Assembly: GCF_001194135.2 (NCBI RefSeq)
Contig: NC_069004.1
Span: 30,858,679 to 30,912,638 of the forward strand
Length of the DNA: 53,960 nt
Reading direction: 5' to 3'
Source of the DNA: Octopus bimaculoides
Lineage: Eukaryota
Below are positions 37,170 to 52,289 of the stretch, one piece after another. The notes below the pieces were generated by a model. That model saw only the letters and a list, made by a program, of their open reading frames with translations. It searched no databases and was not told where the DNA came from. Position 1 is the stretch's first letter; every line of letters starts with the position of its first letter. A program made the position numbers and the translations under genes.

Positions 37170-37539
37170 GGGTACAGTTTTGATTTGAAAACACCTACAT
37201 TCACTTTGTGTAGGTCCCTCAGGCTCTTTGGGAAAATATTAAAAAGTTGTGGGCCCTTGAAACCCAGGTTGTTGCAGTAACTGGTCCTGAAGCACAATAG
37301 CACTTCTGCGTTCTTTGGCAGTGTGCAGTGTCGACCCATCCTGGCATTTGTGTAGCTTTCAATGCCAAAATTTGGCACAAACCCTTCCTGTATCTTCCAG
37401 ATGTAAATTACCACATATTTCTCCTGGCTTCGCTCCAGGGGGTAGAGTCTTAGCTGCTTCAGCCTCTCCCAGTAGCTGAGGTGTTGCAATGAGACGATCT
37501 TCTTTGTGAAGCTTCGTTGGATTGCTTCAAAGTCCGCTC

Positions 37540-37540
<1 letters not shown>
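37170..37540 (-). pseudogene. CR1/L2-type LINE ORF2 C-terminal fragment
   Basis: ADFEAIQRSFTKKI..LSYWERLKQLRLYPLERSQEKYVVIYIWKIQEGFVPN...GPQLFNIFPKSLR...FKSKL matches the LE.VQR.FTK...LSY.ERL..L.L.SLE.RR...FN.LP...FK.KLD motif series of CR1-like elements. Confidence 0.85.
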
Positions 37541-37583
<43 letters not shown>

Positions 37584-37906
37584 ATATACATATCAAATAT
37601 GGTATGCGTGATATTTTAAAATCAAAATGACAACTAGACCCTGCACCTTCACACACATGCATGTGTGTCAGAAGAGTTACTGGGAGTTGAAGTGGGTACA
37701 CTCAGGGGCGCCTGCTGCTTGAAAATTTAATAGTGAAGTGGATGATTAACATTTTATCAAAGTATACACTTGTACCCACTTCACTATGCATTTTATGTAT
37801 ATATGTATGCATATGTATATGTGTGTGTGTATATATATTTATGTATGCATGTATATATGTACGTGTGTATGGTATGTAGATGTGTATATGTATGTGTGTA
37901 TATGTT

Positions 37907-43295: not shown

Positions 43296-43626
43296 ATAGA
43301 AAGGCATAGGAAAAATTTCTTTAGACTTTGCAAAAATTTAGGACTAATCTCCACAATGAGTAAAGATTATCATAGAGTGAATTTTCTTGAGGCTACCTTC
43401 TGTCTTGATACTGGATCATTTGAACCATTTCATAAACCAAATGATCATATTAAGTACATTAACGTAGCATCCAACCATCCACCCTTGATTATACAGCAAC
43501 TGGTTAAAAATATTTCTACAAGAATCTCTAGATTATCTGCTAATAATAAATTTTTTTAAATCACATGCAGTTTGTTATAATGCTTCTCTAGCTAGGACTG
43601 GGTACTATGAAAAAATTCAATATATA
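43296..43626 (+). pseudogene. Penelope-like element reverse transcriptase C-terminal fragment
   Basis: IERHRKNFFRLCKNLGL...VNFLEATFCLDTGSFEPFHKPNDHIKYINVASNHPPLII...ISTRISRLS, then frameshifted YNASLARTGYYEKIQY; matches the PLE pattern VNFLD.T.DL..G.Y.PY.KPN....Y....SNHPP...R.S.LS...YN.AL..SGY. Confidence 0.85.
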
Positions 43627-44577
43627 CAAGAAGCAGGTATGCACAACACTGGTAATTCCTCCAACTGTGATGCACATTGTAGCCACCACAAGGTCACACT
43701 TTGAGAACTCACTCAGATAAAGAATATAGGCCAGAAGAATTGGTCATATCAATGAACTACCAACAAAAACTCATAGACACACGCGACATAATAATCTGAT
43801 AAAATAAGCACCAGACTACCAAATAACTAATAAGTACCAGAATCAATTCATTCAACTAAAACACTTCAAGATGGTGCCCCAGCATGGTCGCAGTTCAATG
43901 ACTGAAACAAGTAACAGGTAAAAGGCAATACCTTAAAATAAAATCTTAAATAAAACAAGTTGCTCGTTTGTATTATTTTCAAATAAATATGCTACTTTTT
44001 TTTTTTTCTAAATTCTATCAACATAATCACAATCTACTCCATCAAAAACCTATTTCTGCACAATCTGGAATCTTCCCCATAACTGCTGTCTGTCATTTAC
44101 TCCCCATCTTCTATTTTCTTATTCATTGCCTGACACCAAGCCTAGTATATGCACTCATCTTGCACATTTTATGTCAAATCTCTATGTATCTCTCTCTCCC
44201 GCTCCCCCAACCGCCTCACTATATGATGTAAAATATAACCAAAGAAATCAACCAACCGAACAGCTTACATTTATATGGGTTATTATTCTTCTTCATTATT
44301 TCATCTCCATTTTCTATGATGGTTTCACAGGATCCAGCAAGCTGCAGGGTTACGTTGAGCTCCAACATCTGTTTTGGCATGGTTTCTAATGACTGGACGC
44401 CCTTCTTGACACCAACTACCTTACGGCCTCTACTGGGTGTTTTATTGCACCACACTGTGAAGGGGTTGGTGGCGGGGTGGGCAACAAGCTGTGCAAACCA
44501 TGTCAAATAAACCATAGAGTATGACCCACTCCTTGGACCATCACACTTGGTCAAACCATCTGCAGTGAGGACAATTT

Positions 44578-47405: not shown

Positions 47406-47694
47406 CCCATGTTTGTATAATATACAATATTATTCTATGTGTAGTACCACAAAACCTCGGTTTCTCTGTATATTTCACACAAATAATCAAAAAGGTCTCG
47501 GTCACTAGTCATTGCTTCTGTGAGGCCCAAAGTTCAAAGATCATGCTTCATCACTTTGTCCTATGTCTTCCTGGGTCTACCTCTACCACAGGTTCCATCC
47601 ACAGTTAGAGATCAGCACTTCTTTACACAAAGATCAGTATTTCACTATATTTTACACTAACCTAAACATCTAACTCTGGCCAGTATTTCAATAT

Positions 47695-49149
47695 ATTCTC
47701 GAGATGAGAATGCAAGAAGTGCATTTTAAGGGACATTCAGCATCCCATTCTTTCATATGCTGTTAGCATGTTGTTCATCAAACCAGCAGAGTTTTCAGCT
47801 CTATGATTTCCAAGAAAGTTCTGTACAATCAACTCAAACGAATCCCATGCCGTCAGCTCAACTGGATTCTGTTTACCTCTGAATTTCCTATCAGATATCA
47901 ATTCTCTGATCTCGTTTCAGTTTTGTGTCACTTTTCTCCGCACCAAATTTTACTTTTAGGAACTGGAAGCCACAACAATCGTATGTCATTGCTTTTACCA
48001 AGTTTTTCATGAAGCTGAGTTTGATGTGAAAAGATGGAAGGAAGATCTTTTGCAGGTCTACCAGTGGCATATGCTGCACATTGTACCGACCAACTATGCA
48101 CTCATCTCATTTAGGCTAGTCTTTTACATTGTAATGGTTGCTGTCGTCGCTGTTGTTCCAAATACACAAGAAGCACAAAATGTTTGGTATACTCCAGCTG
48201 TAGTCCTAGGAGGAAGGAAAACACCTTTAAATCACCACAAATATTGCACATATGAACTGAGTAATTAACTCCTTTCAGAATGAGTTCCATCAATTCATAA
48301 GTTTCTTCCATATCGACAACATGACTGACAGGAATGTAAAGTTTTCCATAATCATTATGTGACAACACAGCTTTGAGGCTAACCTCAAGTCTATAAACAA
48401 TCTCCATTCGTTGGCCACATGCATTTGTCCTAGTTTTTGCATGAGTGCAATCATGTCAGTACAGAAACCAGCATTATTTTCTTGCTTGCAAAACACAGAT
48501 AAACTTTTATGACGAGAACAGAAAATGGAAATTTTTGAACCTTGCTGTAGGAGATTCCGTTGTTGTAGTCTGGATCCGAAAACTTTCGCCCTCTCCTTTG
48601 ACAATGCTAAGTTTCTTACTAAATCATTCAAATATTCTTCATTAAACTAGCCTGGCTCATTTTCTTAAAATCACCTAGGTACTCTTCATTGATAGGAGAG
48701 TCAGGGGGTTCATTGGGCGACGTGTCAAGATTTTCAGGTGAAGCATGTGAGAGGGGAACTGGGACAGGGTTCTCGAAGTCATGTAGGACCGGTTTTAGAG
48801 CTGACTTACAATCTGCATACACAATTCTGCTTCAGTCTTCTTTGAGAAACCCCTAATATTAGTCACGCAAAAGTAACAATCAGAGACATGATTGACTGGC
48901 TCACACCATACCATTGGTACAGCAAAAGGCATTCCCTTCTGTTTTCCATTCAGCCACTGTGTAAGCCATTCAGCCACAGCATATATGAGGTGCCCACCTC
49001 TTGTCTTGGTCCCCAACTTTACACTCGAAATAATATTTATAGGCAGTTTTTAATTTGGTGGCAATGTTCTTCCGCTGGTCACATGGAGCAAATTTTCCAC
49101 AGACATAACAAAAATTGTCTGGGAGATTCACACAGTCTCTCCTCGTCAT
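47695..49149 (-). pseudogene. Chapaev3-type transposase with frameshifts and stops
   Basis: CVNLPDNFCYVCG...VGDQDKRWAPHIC; PFAVPMVWCEPVNHVSDCYFC; MNDLVRNLALSKERA; EWRLFID; ICGDLKV..LLGLQLEYTK; LPSFHIKLSFMKNLVKA; FLGNHR; MSLKMHFLHSHL. Ends before the last catalytic Glu motif. Confidence 0.9.
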
Positions 49150-49539
49150 GATCTAACACAATGAATACAGTTAAAACAGTAATCACGCAGAGTGAGAGAT
49201 ACACATACCACATGTGACGGCAGTGCAAACGACACTGAGAGCTACCAAGAACAAACTGACGTATTTGACATTGCACACAATACATAAGCACCATCTAATG
49301 AACTTTCTCAACATTTGTTTTACTGCTGTTATTTATTTTATTTCGAATTAAGACCACGTTCATTTTAGCAAATTTTATAATACAGCCTATATCTAGCTGA
49401 AAGTATAATTATAATCTTGTGCATGCGCATAACTCAAAATCCTGACATGTTAGAACAATTCTGAGTCCGGAATCAGCATCCTCGATTTAGCCTAAAACAC
49501 ATGCTTTTACCCCAGCAGCGAAATCTTTGTTGTCCAGTG
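47695..49539 (-). mobile_element. Chapaev3-type (CMC superfamily) DNA transposon, 3'-truncated
   Basis: Left end CACTGGACAAC at 49539 on the minus strand and transposase homology downstream; no matching right end seen. Confidence 0.85.
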
Positions 49540-50889: not shown

Positions 50890-51200
50890 TTAGACGGTTT
50901 AACTGGAACTGGTAAGCCAGATAGCTGCACCTGGTTCCAGTTTGATTTGGCATGGTTTCTACAGCTGGATGCCCTTCCTAATGCCAACCACTCCAAGAGT
51001 GTAATGGGTGCTTTTTACATGTCATTTACATAACACTGGCAATGGCCACTACTACAATTTCACTTGGCTTGACGAGTCTTCTCAAGCACCAAAGGTCTCA
51101 GTCACTTATCATCAACTCCAAGAGGCCCGACATTTGAAGATCATGCTTCACCATCTCATCTCATGTGTTCCTGGGTCTACCTCTCCCACTGGTTCCCTCC
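50890..51200 (-). mobile_element. S4 SINE
   Basis: Reverse S4 blocks (GGCTGGATGCCCTTCCTAATGCCAACC..GGGTCTACCTCT). Confidence 0.75.
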
Positions 51201-51295
51201 TATAATAGCATAATATATTGAAGGTACAGTTCTATATTTAAGAGATGTACTTTATTTACATTTGACGGATATTTGTCCTCATCTTGTTTGTTATT

Positions 51296-51341
51296 AACAC
51301 AACGTTTTGGCTGATATACCCTCCAGCCTTCTTCAGGTGTC
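51296..51341 (-). ncRNA. Minimal hammerhead motif, probably inactivated (G12A)
   Basis: GACAC-CTGAAGA-A-GGCTG..CAGCC-AAAA-CGTT-GTGTT; GAAA reads AAAA. Confidence 0.6.
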
Positions 51342-51659
51342 TTGGGGAAATTTCGAACCTGGGTTCTCATTCCTAAGGTATTTTTTTTATGTTGTTGTTA
51401 TTATTATTATTATTATTATCATTATTATTATTATTATTAGTAGTATTTAGGTCACTGCCTGGAATCGAACTTGGAATCTTGGGGTTAGTAGCCCACGCTC
51501 TTAACCACTACGCCCCACGGGCTTATGGCGTAGTGGTTAAGAGCACGGGCTACTATCCCCAAGATTCCGAGTTCGATTCCAGACAGTGACCTTAATAATA
51601 ATAATAATAACATTGAAAAATATCTTAGGAATGAGAACCCAGGCTCGAAATTTCCCCAA

Positions 51660-51705
51660 GACACCTGATGAAGGCTGGGGGGTATATCAGCTGAAACGTT
51701 GTGTT
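51660..51705 (+). ncRNA. Minimal type-I hammerhead motif
   Basis: GACAC-CTGATGA-A-GGCTG..CAGCT-GAAA-CGTT-GTGTT; stem I GACAC/GTGTT; palindromic AACGTT stem III; predicted cleavage after GUU at 51700. Confidence 0.7.
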
Positions 51706-52289
51706 AACAACAAACAAGATGAGGAGAAATATCCGTCAAATGTAAATAATGCAAATAATATATTGAAGTCCTGAGTCAATCTGCATAACCTGCAAGAGAT
51801 TATGGTAGGAAAGAATAGGGAGACTTGAAGATCTTGTTTTCCAACTGCCAGGAGCATGAACGCCCAAGACAGCAGCAGAATAATAGCTGTCACCAGATAG
51901 ATATCACCCAAGAAGACATGGCACACAAAACCTGGAGGGTTGGATAGGTTTTGCTGCTCAGTATATGGGCCAACTCTACAGGAGGCACTAAGATCATTTT
52001 CCAGGTTTTTTTTTTTTGTTTTGTGGTTTGCACTGTGAAGGATAAAGTAGAAAAAAGACCCAAGGTGCTATGAAAAGGAATTGAACCTGAAACCATATGG
52101 TTGGGAAGGAAACTTCTTAACTTCACAGCCATGCTTGGACCTATAGATAGATAGATAGATTGATTGATTGATAAATAGACAGATAGATAGATAAATAGAT
52201 AGATAGACACAGATAGATGGATAGACAGACAGGTAGACAGAATGAGTGGATGGATGGACACAAAGTTGGATAGATATATTCATGAATAT

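What the first reader, a model, noticed from the sequence alone, without database searches (positions are those of the whole stretch)
51210..51768. Palindromic tRNA-SINE dimer carrying hammerhead ribozymes, inserted as one unit with a 14-bp TSD
Seen: two copies of one unit lie back to back, 12 nt apart, with about 13 substitutions between arms by eye, several at CpG. Each unit has a tRNA-like head with A-box (T)GGCGTAGTGG and B-box GTTCGATTCC, then (TAA)n, a spacer, a minimal hammerhead and a short tail. The whole 531 bp is bracketed by an exact 14-bp direct repeat, so it was one insertion event. Neither sense strand has a run of 4 or more T before the ribozyme, so Pol III could read through it. 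Known: minimal type-I HHRs with a palindromic, loop-less stem III are typical of Penelope-like elements (PLEs) and cleave as dimers; PLE insertions often form inverted structures; Schistosoma SMalpha is a precedent for a tRNA-SINE with an HHR. Inference: this is a non-autonomous Pol III SINE with a PLE-derived ribozyme tail, mobilised by a Penelope RT/endonuclease rather than a LINE. The two HHRs are on opposite strands, so dimeric cleavage would have to occur in trans between transcripts. I cannot tell whether the family is already catalogued.
Basis: partly seen in the sequence, partly recalled or inferred. Interest (0 to 1): 0.9.

Follow-up and report, generated by a model that had tools for sequence, protein, structure and literature searches.

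The report
Hammerhead-carrying SINE inserted as inverted pair
A short octopus "jumping gene" with a tRNA-like front and a small self-cutting-RNA (hammerhead) motif at its back landed here as two copies facing each other in one event, and relatives elsewhere insert the same way, which points to an unusual retrotransposon class (Penelope-like elements) as the engine, though that engine was not found.

Summary
Window 51224-51754 is a 531-bp head-to-head pair of one ~300-nt element, flanked by an exact 14-bp direct repeat. The host is Octopus bimaculoides. Each arm has Pol III A/B boxes, (TAA)n, a body, a minimal type-I hammerhead (HHR) and a tail.

Corrections:
- The arms differ at 22 sites, not 13.
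- The 12-nt "spacer" is the 5' end of the minus-strand copy, which is complete.
- The plus-strand copy is truncated at both ends (12 nt at 5', ~24 nt at 3').
- Only the plus-strand HHR core is intact. The other has G12>A at a decayed CpG.

An exhaustive profile search found 143 translated relatives, and DNA was fetched for 14 loci. A second lineage has an unrelated tRNA-like head but shares the ~100-nt HHR+tail module. Across 19 copies the catalytic core is 95% conserved, N7 is free, and two stem pairs show compensatory changes. A covariance model built without octopus sequences finds both window arms (E~1e-14).

Ten of 11 assessable insertions are head-to-head pairs, some with added tandem HHR units. 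One arm is always 21-40 nt shorter at its 3' end, and TSDs are 12-15 bp. This matches the published Penelope-like integration signature. No Penelope element carrying the module was found, and RTE LINE tails do not match.

Verdict: new variant of a known kind; interest moderate-high.

The parts
51210..51223 (.). Left target-site duplication ATAATATATTGAAG
   Evidence: Exact 14-bp direct repeat with 51755-51768, abutting both outer ends of the pair.
51224..51526 (-). Complete SINE copy (L), 303 nt: head, (TAA)n, body, hammerhead, tail and the true family 3' end
   Evidence: Arm alignment. Its 5' end includes the 12-nt 'spacer'. Its 3' terminal 21-24 nt is shared with L014, P0001 and P0015.
51450..51522 (-). 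tRNA-like head of L, with A-box-like 51505-51515 and B-box-like 51462-51471
   Evidence: Rfam tRNA scores 14.2 bits, below gathering. A/B box patterns found. ARAGORN negative.
51395..51446 (-). (TAA)n microsatellite of L, expanded relative to R
51296..51341 (-). Hammerhead of L, inactivated: CUGAAGA...AAAA, with G12>A at 51308 through CpG decay
   Evidence: Still scores 62.3 bits with the non-octopus covariance model.
51224..51244 (-). Terminal 21 nt of the family 3' end, present only in the L arm (the one-sided extension)
   Evidence: Homologous to the L014 minus arm and, at codon level, to P0001 and P0015.
51527..51754 (+). Inverted SINE copy (R), 228 nt, truncated by 12 nt at the 5' end and ~24 nt at the 3' end
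   Evidence: There is AT/ATAAT microhomology at its junction with the TSD (direct reading).
51527..51591 (+). tRNA-like head of R, with A-box-like 51526-51536 and B-box-like 51570-51579
51593..51612 (+). (TAA)n of R
51660..51705 (+). Intact minimal type-I hammerhead of R: GACAC-CUGAUGA-A-GGCUGG(GGGGUAUA)UCAGCU-GAAA-CG-UU|GUGUU. Predicted cleavage falls between 51700 and 51701.
   Evidence: Only descriptor hit in the window. Scores 58.3 bits, E 1.5e-13, with a model built from other lineages.
51706..51754 (+). Proximal tail of R. The block AACAACAAACAAGATGAGGA.AAATATCCGTCAAATGTAAATAA is conserved across lineages.
51755..51768 (.). Right target-site duplication ATAATATATTGAAG

Best explanation
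Window 51224-51754 is one composite retrotransposition event of a tRNA-headed, Pol III-type SINE family of Octopus bimaculoides. The 3' ~130 nt of this family is a module carrying a Penelope-type minimal type-I hammerhead ribozyme plus a conserved tail.

The event left a complete copy on the minus strand. Head-to-head with it lies an inverted copy truncated at both ends, and the pair sits between 14-bp target-site duplications.

**Shown**
- The anatomy of the pair.
- The single-event TSD.
- Membership of a multi-copy family.
- Family-level conservation of the ribozyme core and stems.
- Sharing of the HHR+tail module by a second SINE lineage with an unrelated head.
- Near-constant recurrence of head-to-head (and sometimes also tandem) composite insertions, with a one-sided 21-40-nt 3' extension and 12-15-bp TSDs.

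**Inferred mechanism**
1. Pol III transcribes the unit from its internal A/B boxes. There is no internal terminator.
2. The 3' module is the handle recognised by the reverse transcriptase of a Penelope-like element.
3. The GIY-YIG endonuclease makes nicks staggered by 12-15 bp.
4. One DNA end primes at the very 3' end of the RNA. The other arm arises either from the second DNA end priming 21-40 nt further in on a second RNA, or from snap-back copying of the first cDNA.
5. The two cDNAs meet at their 5' (head) ends.

The ribozyme is conserved in the active lineages. It probably acts as a dimer on multimeric or paired transcripts, as published for PLE min-HHRs. It does not set the ends of the inserted DNA.

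After insertion the copies decay neutrally, fastest at the two CpGs inside the core (11.1/G12 and 15.2/16.2). That decay killed the minus-strand ribozyme here.
For: **Anatomy and TSD:**

**Host and family**
- Two O. bimaculoides proteins translate other copies.
- 143 representative translated relatives were found.
- DNA copies were fetched in Logan and ENA contigs.

**Ribozyme**
- The descriptor gives 1 hit in the window against 0 in 14.5 Mb of simulations.
- The published min-HHR hallmarks are matched (PMC4209133).
- Codon and nucleotide states TG/CA/TG/CA at 11.1-12 and CG/CG/AG/TG at 15.2-16.2 imply an intact CG-containing consensus.
- In 19 DNA copies the core has mean identity 0.947 and N7 0.58. 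Stems are 0.72-0.81 and the upstream flank 0.62. Twelve of 19 cores are intact.
- 80.5% of cells are paired, against 18-49% in slid registers. Compensatory changes occur at 10.4-11.4 (CG x7 / UA x7) and 2.3-1.3 (CG x12 / UA x2).
- A covariance model built only from non-octopus copies scores the window arms at 62.3 and 58.3 bits, and nothing else above 13 bits.

**Shared module, different heads:**

**Architecture**
- Ten of 11 complexes are head-to-head, three of them with added 114-129-nt tandem units.
- Whole-complex TSDs: 14 bp exact (window), 15 bp 13/15 (L008), 15 bp 13/15 (L013a), ~13 bp (L013b), 12 bp exact (L018).
- The one-sided 3' extension is documented.
- The PLE signature of an inverted 5'-truncated copy, partial tandems and a 30-40-bp tail at one end is described in PMC8557442.
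- Penelope elements are abundant and recently active in octopus genomes (PMC13282606 and PMC8967140).

**LINE rival test:** six RTE 3' ends, all ending in (TGA)n, do not match the SINE tail.
Against: - No autonomous Penelope-like element, and no autonomous element of any kind, carrying the HHR+tail module was found. The search covered the window and ~110 kb of flanks of related copies. Octopus PLE sequences could not be retrieved.
- Rfam hammerhead models give no hit at E<=10 in the window or E<=1 in L008.
- Thermodynamic folding is unremarkable (z -0.4). The designed double-hammerhead dimer is not the predicted optimum: -26.7 against -34.6 kcal/mol.
- Covariation is statistically borderline: 32 of 500 shuffles reach the observed score. 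It rests on few independent events, one of which is reachable by two CpG transitions through a G-U intermediate.
- The cleavage site lies inside the element and coincides with no junction, so cleavage is not needed to explain the insertions.
- TSDs of 12-15 bp are also typical of LINE-driven SINEs.
- Most loci were reached through ORFs, which may favour composite structures. Even so, the window, L013a and the loci reached through four short ORFs (and earlier) are inverted in 5 of 5 assessable cases.
- The tRNA origin of the head is weakly supported.
Confidence: 0.64

Rival explanations
1. An ordinary LINE-dependent tRNA-SINE. Its 3' module comes from, or is recognised by, a LINE (for example CR1/L2-like or RTE). 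The head-to-head pairs arise by twin priming during LINE TPRT. The hammerhead is a passenger, or has a role unrelated to the partner.
For: - TSDs of 12-15 bp fit LINE TPRT.
- The octopus 3' region contains a short duplicated motif, GTAAATAAT x2, reminiscent of some LINE/SINE termini.
- RTE LINEs are frequent near the ENA copies.
- LINE fragments are present in the window.
- No PLE with the module was found.
Against: - Six RTE 3' ends, terminating in (TGA)n, show no similarity to the module or its extension. The best E is 0.016 over 16 nt.
- Classical twin priming inverts a different part of the same RNA rather than duplicating the whole unit.
- Near-obligatory inverted or tandem composites with a one-sided 3' extension are described for PLEs, not for LINE-driven SINEs (PMC8557442).
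- This type of hammerhead is the one reported in PLE pLTRs (PMC4209133).
- LINE clades other than RTE were not tested.
Confidence: 0.2
2. A non-LTR retrozyme. The hammerhead module propagates as a small circular RNA copied by rolling-circle reverse transcription, and the tRNA-like head is a secondary fusion.
For: - Arrays of 114-129-nt direct units, each with an intact HHR, exist in L008, L012 and L018.
- The literature regards animal retrozymes as PLE-dependent non-autonomous elements (PMC7229834, PMC7761336, preprint 10.64898/2026.07.22.740005).
Against: - In the window and in all octopus-type copies there is one HHR per unit, no tandem array, and a Pol III head at a fixed distance.
- The units have defined 5' and 3' ends rather than circular permutations.
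- This reading overlaps with the best explanation instead of excluding it.
Confidence: 0.1
3. A foldback DNA transposon or MITE, in which the palindrome itself is the mobile unit and is cut and pasted by a transposase.
For: Palindromic structure recurs at many loci. DNA-transposon remnants exist nearby (window 47.7-49.2 kb; Transposase_1 in L017).
Against: - The two arms are never equivalent. Junction points, 5' truncations and 3' ends differ from locus to locus, and some complexes add direct tandem units.
- TSDs vary from 12 to 15 bp and are longer than those of known cut-and-paste superfamilies (my own knowledge).
- The Pol III-type heads sit at the centre, not at the termini.
- At least one array (L012) has no inverted arm.
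Confidence: 0.04
4. An assembly artefact, or a post-insertion local inverted duplication.
For: The window is a gapped short-read draft with 14 N runs. PLE-type inverted structures are known to trouble such assemblies (PMC8557442). No ORF from this exact locus exists in other assemblies, so no independent copy of the locus could be checked.
Against: - The arms differ at 22 sites, in microsatellite length and at both ends.
- An exact TSD brackets the pair.
- The same architecture occurs in long-read-style ENA contigs and in Logan contigs.
Confidence: 0.02

Closest known systems
Minimal type-I hammerheads of Penelope-like elements (Cervera & de la Pena 2014, PMC4209133; Lunse et al. 2017, cited but not readable here)
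   Same: The CUGANGA/GAAA core with no helix III. Palindromic 15.2/16.2 (ACGU). An unpaired nucleotide between A9 and 10.1. G10.1-C11.1 in the consensus. A 3-5-bp helix I and a 6-bp helix II. Dispersed in large numbers, and expected to cleave only as dimers.
   Different: Here the motif sits in the 3' module of a Pol III tRNA-headed SINE rather than in a pLTR next to an RT/GIY-YIG ORF. No PLE with this particular sequence was found.
Sm-alpha / Sj-alpha SINE-like elements of Schistosoma (Ferbeyre 1998 and Laha 2000, as summarised in PMC6765202 and PMC8490949)
   Same: A short non-coding retroposon with Pol III promoter boxes and a type-I hammerhead.
   Different: Sm-alpha carries a canonical HHR with a helix III and loop-loop contacts. 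It occurs largely in tandem, and the ribozyme lies downstream of the promoter in multimeric transcripts. The octopus element has a min-HHR, one per unit, and inserts as inverted pairs. Sequence homology was not tested.
Animal non-LTR retrozymes (Cervera & de la Pena 2020, PMC7229834; Li et al. 2026 preprint 10.64898/2026.07.22.740005)
   Same: Non-autonomous, HHR-bearing, and proposed to depend on PLEs. The ENA-lineage arrays of 114-129-nt units resemble short retrozyme arrays.
   Different: Retrozymes are defined as tandem repeats of ~170-400 nt expressed as circRNAs, and no tRNA-like Pol III head is described for them. The window element is a head-body-tail SINE with no tandem array.
PLE insertion architecture (Evgen'ev & Arkhipova 2005; Craig et al. 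2021, PMC8557442)
   Same: An inverted 5'-truncated copy abutting the 5' end, partial tandems, and an extra 30-40 bp at only one end of the insertion.
   Different: This architecture was described for autonomous PLEs of several kb. Here it is seen on 0.1-0.3-kb non-coding units, and the extension is 21-40 nt.
Octopus tRNA-derived SINEs OR1, OR2 and OK (Ohshima & Okada 1994, as cited in PMC4824008 and PMC4758252)
   Same: tRNA-derived SINEs of octopus.
   Different: OR1 and OR2 are CORE-SINEs, and the present element has no CORE domain.

Membership tests
SINE2/tRNA | Internal Pol III promoter (A and B boxes) in a 5' head | tested here: met
   GGGCGTAGTGG/TGGCGTAGTGG and AGTTCGATTC, 44 nt start-to-start, in both arms. 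This is sequence-level only; transcription was not tested.
SINE2/tRNA | Head recognisably derived from a tRNA | tested here: inconclusive
   Rfam tRNA scores 14.2 bits against a gathering score of 29. ARAGORN is negative, even on a CpG-restored head. No cloverleaf appears in the MFE.
SINE2/tRNA | Short, non-coding, multi-copy, dispersed, flanked by TSDs | tested here: met
   Units are 228-303 nt. Other copies exist in O. bimaculoides proteins and in Logan contigs. TSDs are 12-15 bp.
SINE2/tRNA | 3' tail shared with an autonomous partner | tested here: inconclusive
   The module is shared between two SINE lineages with different heads. No autonomous element with it was found, and RTE tails do not match.
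Hammerhead ribozyme, minimal type I (PLE type) | Catalytic core C3 U4 G5 A6 N7 G8 A9 ... G12 A13 A14 A15.1 ... U16.1 H17 | tested here: met
   Met in the R arm and in the family consensus, and in 12 of 19 copies overall. Not met in the L arm (G12>A).
Hammerhead ribozyme, minimal type I (PLE type) | Helices I and II in register, open helix I, no helix III but palindromic 15.2/16.2 | tested here: met
   Helix I has 5 bp, helix II has 6 bp, and ACGU is present. 80.5% of cells are paired against 18-49% in slid registers.
Hammerhead ribozyme, minimal type I (PLE type) | Extra nucleotide between A9 and 10.1, and a G10.1-C11.1 pair | tested here: met
   The extra A column is invariant. 10.1-11.1 is GC x9, GU x4. 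R has G-U through CpG decay.
Hammerhead ribozyme, minimal type I (PLE type) | Covariation supporting the stems | tested here: inconclusive
   Three pairs have double-sided changes, but only 32 of 500 shuffles fall below the observed score and there are few independent events.
Hammerhead ribozyme, minimal type I (PLE type) | Match to curated Rfam hammerhead models | tested here: not met
   No hit at gathering score or at E<=10, nor in L008 at E<=1. Loop-less min-HHRs are probably outside those models (inference).
Hammerhead ribozyme, minimal type I (PLE type) | Self-cleavage | not testable with these tools
   Needs in vitro transcription of a monomer, a tandem dimer and a G12A control.
Penelope-like-element-dependent insertion | Inverted 5'-truncated copy adjoining the 5' end of the main copy | tested here: met
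   Met in the window (R lacks 12 nt at its 5' end) and in 9 further complexes.
Penelope-like-element-dependent insertion | Extra ~30-40 bp present at only one end of the insertion | tested here: met
   21-24 nt in the window, ~40 in L008, ~26 in L013a, ~40 in L013b.
Penelope-like-element-dependent insertion | Partial direct tandems (pLTR-like) | tested here: not met
   Absent in the window. Present in L008, L012 and L018.
Penelope-like-element-dependent insertion | An RT + GIY-YIG element sharing the 3' module | tested here: inconclusive
   None was found in the window or in ~110 kb of related flanks. The octopus genome could not be searched.
Non-LTR retrozyme | Tandem repeats, each with a type-I HHR, expressed as circRNA | tested here: not met
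   There is no tandem array in the window. circRNA is not testable here.

The most novel reading that the evidence does not exclude
Pol III tRNA-headed SINEs in at least two animal lineages (octopus and an unidentified host of the ENA contigs) have independently captured the same hammerhead-bearing 3' module, and they parasitise Penelope-like elements rather than LINEs. This would be a SINE-PLE partnership. It would account for many of the thousands of 'dispersed' minimal hammerheads reported in metazoan genomes. It would also link SINEs, animal retrozymes and PLE pLTRs as one continuum, and give a compact natural substrate for dissecting the unexplained inverted/tandem integration chemistry of PLEs.
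Probability: 0.5. Interest if true: 0.72.

Novelty: new variant of a known kind. Interest (0 to 1): 0.62.

Why it matters
SINEs are textbook parasites of LINEs. In the literature I could search I found no description of a tRNA-headed SINE that depends on a Penelope-like element (the sequence strings appear in no paper).

Minimal hammerheads occur by the thousand in animal genomes. Most are reported as dispersed motifs of unknown carrier and unknown role (PMC7761336). A SINE carrier would explain their dispersal.

The 0.1-0.3-kb units reproduce the peculiar PLE insertion products: a head-to-head pair, partial tandems and a one-sided 3' extension. That makes them a far simpler system than 3-4-kb PLEs for working out that mechanism, which Craig et al. 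2021 call an open task.

Practically, these palindromes form hairpins, mimic miRNA precursors in Rfam scans, can be exonised (dystrobrevin beta isoform X1), and are likely to be mis-annotated or mis-assembled in cephalopod genomes.

Tried and rejected
1. Rfam at gathering and at E<=10 gave no hammerhead. It returned only sub-threshold miRNA-like hits on the central hairpin and a weak tRNA hit.
2. BLAST of both arms against the window found only TAA microsatellite hits and no other copy.
3. The word-indexed protein search with the sense peptide gave just 2 hits, and their DNA was not retrievable because the gene spans 132 kb or is not on record.
4. I spent a protein search on an RT-like fragment at 43.3-43.7 kb, hoping it was a PLE. 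It returned two short Logan contigs and was a poor use of a capped search.
5. The antisense-frame peptide search found nothing.
6. An exact-pattern scan of JGI metagenomes gave two chance matches inside a bacterial CDS. The IMG/VR scan gave none.
7. I looked for an empty-site control using a paralog of the left-flank repeat at 47.5 kb, but its homology ends 10 nt before the TSD.
8. Pfam on window TE-like ORFs gave no significant family.
9. MFE folding and cofolding were not discriminating.
10. My first reading of the L arm's extra 21 nt as non-templated 'tail' was wrong. It is the family's 3' end.
11. Within the ENA lineage, the W/R x Q/R codon table fits independent CpG decay and gives no sign of selection on inserted copies.
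12. The RTE LINE tail hypothesis was rejected for that lineage.
13. An exact look-up of eight ORFs from this locus in other assemblies found none.
14. Searching papers for the SRA/ERZ accessions to identify host organisms found nothing.
15. Lunse et al. 2017 is not held.
16. Three Pfam calls failed on coordinates that contained stop codons.
Full report
**1. What is in the sequence**

Window 51210-51768 contains two copies of one unit placed head-to-head. The repeat finder reports arms at 51245-51385/51616-51756 (141 nt, 92% complementary) and 51404-51514/51527-51637, separated by 12 nt. An exact 14-bp direct repeat, ATAATATATTGAAG, lies at 51210-51223 and 51755-51768. The bracketed segment is 531 bp.

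A global alignment of the arms gives 206 matches and 22 substitutions (13 transitions, 9 transversions), or 90.4% identity. On top of that there is a large length difference in the (TAA)n tract and a different 3' end.

The window as a whole is a gapped draft eukaryotic scaffold: 14 N-runs, 34% G+C, CpG observed/expected 0.50. No other copy of the element is present in it.

**2. Anatomy of one unit**

Reading the minus-strand copy (L, 51526 down to 51224) in sense, the unit consists of:
- an acceptor-like GCCCGUG;
- an A-box-like GGGCGTAGTGG and a B-box-like AGTTCGATTC, 44 nt apart;
- (TAA)n;
- a 50-nt body, TTAGGAATGAGAACCCAGGTTCGAAATTTCCCC;
- a 46-nt hammerhead-like segment;
- a ~75-nt tail.

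The tRNA ancestry of the head is only weakly supported. Rfam tRNA scores 14.2 bits against a gathering score of 29. ARAGORN is negative, even on a CpG-restored head, and no cloverleaf appears in the MFE.

Neither sense strand contains a T run of 4 or more.

The 12-nt "spacer" is the 5' end of L, which means R starts 12 nt further in.

**3. The hammerhead**

In R the segment reads GACAC-CUGAUGA-A-GGCUGG-GGGGUAUA-UCAGCU-GAAA-CG-UU|GUGUU (51660-51705), with predicted cleavage between 51700 and 51701.

I coded the minimal-HHR descriptor of Cervera & de la Pena 2014:
- helix I of at least 4 bp;
- CUGANGA;
- 0-1 extra nucleotide;
- helix II of at least 4 bp;
- GAAA;
- a palindromic insert of 0, 2 or 4 nt;
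- UH.

This is its only match on either strand of the window. None occurred in 300 second-order Markov simulations, 14.5 Mb in total.

The segment also shows features that the paper lists as emerging hallmarks outside the descriptor: an unpaired nucleotide between A9 and 10.1, G10.1-C11.1, and palindromic 15.2/16.2.

In L the core reads CUGAAGA (allowed, since N7 is free) but AAAA instead of GAAA. G12 is lost at window 51308, so that copy is dead.

The two arms and two translated copies from O. bimaculoides (P0001, P0002) show TG, CA, TG, CA at 11.1-G12 and CG, CG, AG, TG at 15.2-16.2. This is the pattern expected from decay of two CpGs in an ancestral ...CAGCC-GAAA-CG-UU....

Several tests were negative or neutral:
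- Rfam's hammerhead families give no hit at E<=10.
- Folding energies are unremarkable.
- The designed double-hammerhead dimer is feasible (-26.7 kcal/mol) but is not the predicted optimum.

On the window alone, then, the motif is statistically unlikely to be chance, but it is not demonstrably functional.

**4. Finding relatives**

The word-indexed protein search with the sense-frame peptide that spans the hammerhead identified the host. Both hits are Octopus bimaculoides proteins, one of them an annotated dystrobrevin beta isoform whose first 33 residues are translated from a copy of this module. Two further capped searches were unproductive. Exact-pattern scans of metagenomes and viral contigs gave only chance matches in a bacterial gene.

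The exhaustive HMMER search of 1.84 billion representatives, using a profile of four peptides, returned 143 proteins at E<=1e-3. After removing two spurious hits they fall into two groups:
- **Octopus-type peptides** (MRTQVRN..KTPDEGWRVYQPK[R/H/C]CVNNKQDEDKYPSNVNNV) from 1-3-kb Logan contigs.
- **A second type** (QTPEEGWRTYQPK[R/H/C]CGNNNKDEDNSPKTLNDKNHQASSQKFRQ), often repeated every ~43 residues, from long ENA contigs.

The R/H/C alternation is CGU/CAU/UGU, again CpG decay at 15.2-16.2. The contig look-up accepted these ids, and I fetched DNA for 14 loci.

**5. Two SINE lineages share one 3' module**

The Logan copies align with the window unit over head, body, hammerhead and tail at about 80% identity.

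The ENA lineage has a 311-nt full-length unit with an unrelated tRNA-like head (A-box-like TGGCGTAACGG, B-box-like GGTTCAATTC) and an unrelated body. From helix I onward, however, it is homologous to the octopus element. Identity is 85% over the 68 nt of hammerhead plus proximal tail, and the conserved downstream block is AACAA.AAAGATGA.GACAA.

Different heads joined to a common 3' module is the classical mark of SINEs that borrow the recognition tail of one kind of autonomous partner. That is established knowledge of LINE-SINE pairs, for example as summarised in PMC7245038.

**6. Is the hammerhead conserved as a hammerhead?**

An alignment of 19 non-redundant DNA copies gives these mean column identities:

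| Region | Mean identity |
|---|---|
| 11 catalytic-core positions | 0.947 |
| N7 (the one unconstrained core position) | 0.58 |
| Helix I | 0.72 |
| Helix II | 0.81 |
| Six upstream columns | 0.62 |

A9, A13, A14, A15.1 and U16.1 are invariant. G12, which sits in a CpG, is the weakest core position at 0.79. Twelve of 19 copies keep the full core motif, including all young tandem units.

Counting the proposed pairs gives 80.5% standard pairs, against 18-49% when partners are slid by 1-3 columns. Double-sided changes occur at 10.4-11.4 (C-G x7, U-A x7), at 2.3-1.3 (C-G x12, U-A x2) and once at 2.1-1.1.

The shuffle control is only borderline: 32 of 500 shuffles reach the covariation score. Within the ENA lineage the four codon combinations at 10.4/11.4 fit independent CpG decay. 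This means inserted copies drift neutrally, and the covariation reflects a few differences between active lineages.

As an independent test I built a covariance model from nine ENA-lineage copies only. Run with filters off, it scores the two window arms at 62.3 and 58.3 bits (E 1e-14 and 1e-13) with all nine modelled pairs intact. Nothing else in the window scores above 13 bits.

I conclude that the hammerhead is a real, conserved feature of the module. The statistical support for stem covariation is suggestive rather than decisive, and catalysis remains untested.

**7. The insertion architecture recurs**

nhmmer and the covariance model locate 27+ module copies in the fetched loci. Among complexes whose context can be seen, ten contain a minus/plus head-to-head pair: the window, L003, L008, L010, L013a, L013b, L014, L016, L017 and L018. 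Only L012 (4 x 114-nt direct units) does not. L008 and L018 add 2-3 direct 129-nt units after the inverted copy.

Whole-complex direct repeats are:

| Locus | TSD |
|---|---|
| Window | 14 bp, exact |
| L008 | 15 bp, 13/15 |
| L013a | 15 bp, 13/15 |
| L013b | ~13 bp |
| L018 | 12 bp, exact |

In each complex where both outer ends are readable, one arm reaches the family's 3' end and the other stops short. The shortfall is 21-24 nt in the window, ~40 in L008, ~26 in L013a and ~40 in L013b.

I first took the window's extra 21 nt for a non-templated tail. The L014 minus arm and the peptides P0001 and P0015 show that it is the element's genuine terminus. So L is complete and R is truncated at both ends.

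Loci reached through long multi-repeat ORFs are biased towards composites. The less biased set is the window, the incidental L013a, and the short-ORF loci P0013, P0009 and P0092. All five assessable cases in that set are head-to-head.

**8. What this architecture means**

Craig et al. 2021 describe PLE insertions as highly 5'-truncated and often in partial tandem. [quoted passage not shown]

The complexes seen here reproduce all of these features on a 0.1-0.3-kb non-coding unit. Their ribozyme is of the type reported in PLE pLTRs (PMC4209133). Penelope elements are abundant and recently active in octopus genomes (PMC8967140, PMC13282606).

The best-supported mechanism is therefore target-primed reverse transcription by a PLE enzyme. 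Nicks are staggered by 12-15 bp. One arm is primed at the RNA's 3' end. The opposite arm is generated either by the second DNA end priming 21-40 nt further in on a second RNA, or by snap-back copying of the first cDNA. At the R/TSD junction the element's ...AAAT meets the target's ATAAT, which is microhomology.

These steps are inference, and the two variants cannot be separated with the present data.

**9. What remains unshown**

No RT/GIY-YIG element with the module was found in the window or in ~110 kb of flanks. The RT genes there are RTE-clade LINEs (APE 'SDH' motif, RT, RTE-type C-terminus). All six end in (TGA)n immediately after the ORF, and none resembles the SINE tail or extension. 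That removes RTE as the tail donor in that lineage, but it does not test other LINE clades.

The hammerhead's cleavage site lies 55-80 nt inside the element and coincides with none of the junctions. The ribozyme therefore does not define insertion ends. Its conserved core argues for a catalytic or precisely folded role in the active RNA, for example dimeric processing of tandem or paired transcripts, or RT recognition. What that role is remains open.

**10. Comparison with the known, and novelty**

- **Sm-alpha/Sj-alpha** of schistosomes are the precedent for SINE-like elements with Pol III boxes and a hammerhead. They carry canonical HHRs and a tandem organisation (PMC6765202, PMC8490949).
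- **Animal non-LTR retrozymes** are tandem HHR repeats proposed, and in a 2026 preprint argued, to be PLE-dependent. They have no tRNA-like head (PMC7229834, PMC7761336, 10.64898/2026.07.22.740005).
- **The octopus SINEs OR1 and OR2** are CORE-SINEs, and this element lacks a CORE domain (PMC4824008, PMC4758252).

I found no paper describing a tRNA-headed SINE with a PLE-type min-HHR tail or PLE-style composite insertion, and none prints these sequences. I could not consult Repbase or Dfam.

I therefore rate the finding a new variant of a known kind. Its value lies in suggesting a SINE-PLE partnership, a carrier for the many dispersed min-HHRs, and a compact model for PLE integration.

Noticed in passing
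window 51481-51559: Rfam's permissive run reports miRNA-precursor-like matches (MIR9677 at 40.6 bits, mir-885 at 31 and 29 bits, all below gathering) on the centre of the palindrome. This is simply the hairpin formed by the two tRNA-like heads. Such SINE pairs could be mistaken for, or evolve into, hairpin small-RNA sources.
   Followed up: partly
P0002 (O. bimaculoides 'dystrobrevin beta isoform X1', gene range 132 kb on a 97.8-Mb record): The first ~33 residues of this annotated isoform are translated from a copy of the SINE's hammerhead module (GEGWRVYQPKCCVNNKQDEDKYPSK). This is an exonised SINE serving as an alternative first exon, or an annotation artefact.
   Followed up: partly
window 17302-17955: A 161/173-nt tandem repeat of about 4 copies. 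Each unit is (ATT)n followed by CAAATTCCTCTGAAGTTGACTTTGGCTTTCATCCTTTCAAGGGTCAATAAATTAAGTA..., which looks like a SINE-derived mini-satellite.
   Followed up: no
window 19462-19761: A 34-nt tandem repeat, 8.8 copies, 92% matches.
   Followed up: no
window 47740-49152 (-): A chain of frameshifted ORFs with Cys-rich motifs (CYVCGKF..., PFAVPMVWCEPVNHVSDCYFC...). They look like the remnant of a transposon protein, with no Pfam match at E<=1 above noise.
   Followed up: partly
window 43296-43701 (+): An RT-thumb-like ORF fragment (FLEATFCLDTGSFEPFHKPNDHIKYINVASNHPP...). Its only relatives are two short Logan contigs, and there is no Pfam family. I could not decide whether it is PLE-related.
   Followed up: partly
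window 37166-37615 (-): An ORF resembling the C-terminal region of a LINE reverse transcriptase (...YWERLKQLRLYPLERS...). No Pfam hit.
   Followed up: no
window 51091-51200 and 47491-47600: The DNA immediately left of the insertion is itself a repeat, with a 76%-identical paralog 3.6 kb upstream. The homology ends 10 nt before the TSD, so the pair inserted just beyond the edge of an older repeat.
   Followed up: yes
L012 10082-10535 (ENA ERZ21867824 ctg117157l): Four direct 114-nt units, each with an intact hammerhead whose helix I carries the compensatory U-A at 2.3-1.3. There is no inverted copy and no tRNA-like head, so this is a short retrozyme-like array.
   Followed up: partly
L008, L012, L017, L018 (ENA ERZ21867824): RTE-clade LINEs are frequent in this unidentified genome: six copies in ~80 kb, all terminating in (TGA)n right after the ORF.
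   Followed up: yes
all module copies, ~10-45 nt downstream of the cleavage site (window 51706-51745): The block AACAA.AAAGATGA.GACAA.A..CC is conserved across lineages almost as well as the ribozyme stems. Its function is unknown, and it may be the actual RT recognition element.
   Followed up: no
L001, L002 (JGI soil metagenome contigs): The 23-nt pattern over helix I, core and helix II matches exactly inside a bacterial protein-coding gene. This shows that even a 21-specified-base pattern yields chance hits in a collection of that size.
   Followed up: yes
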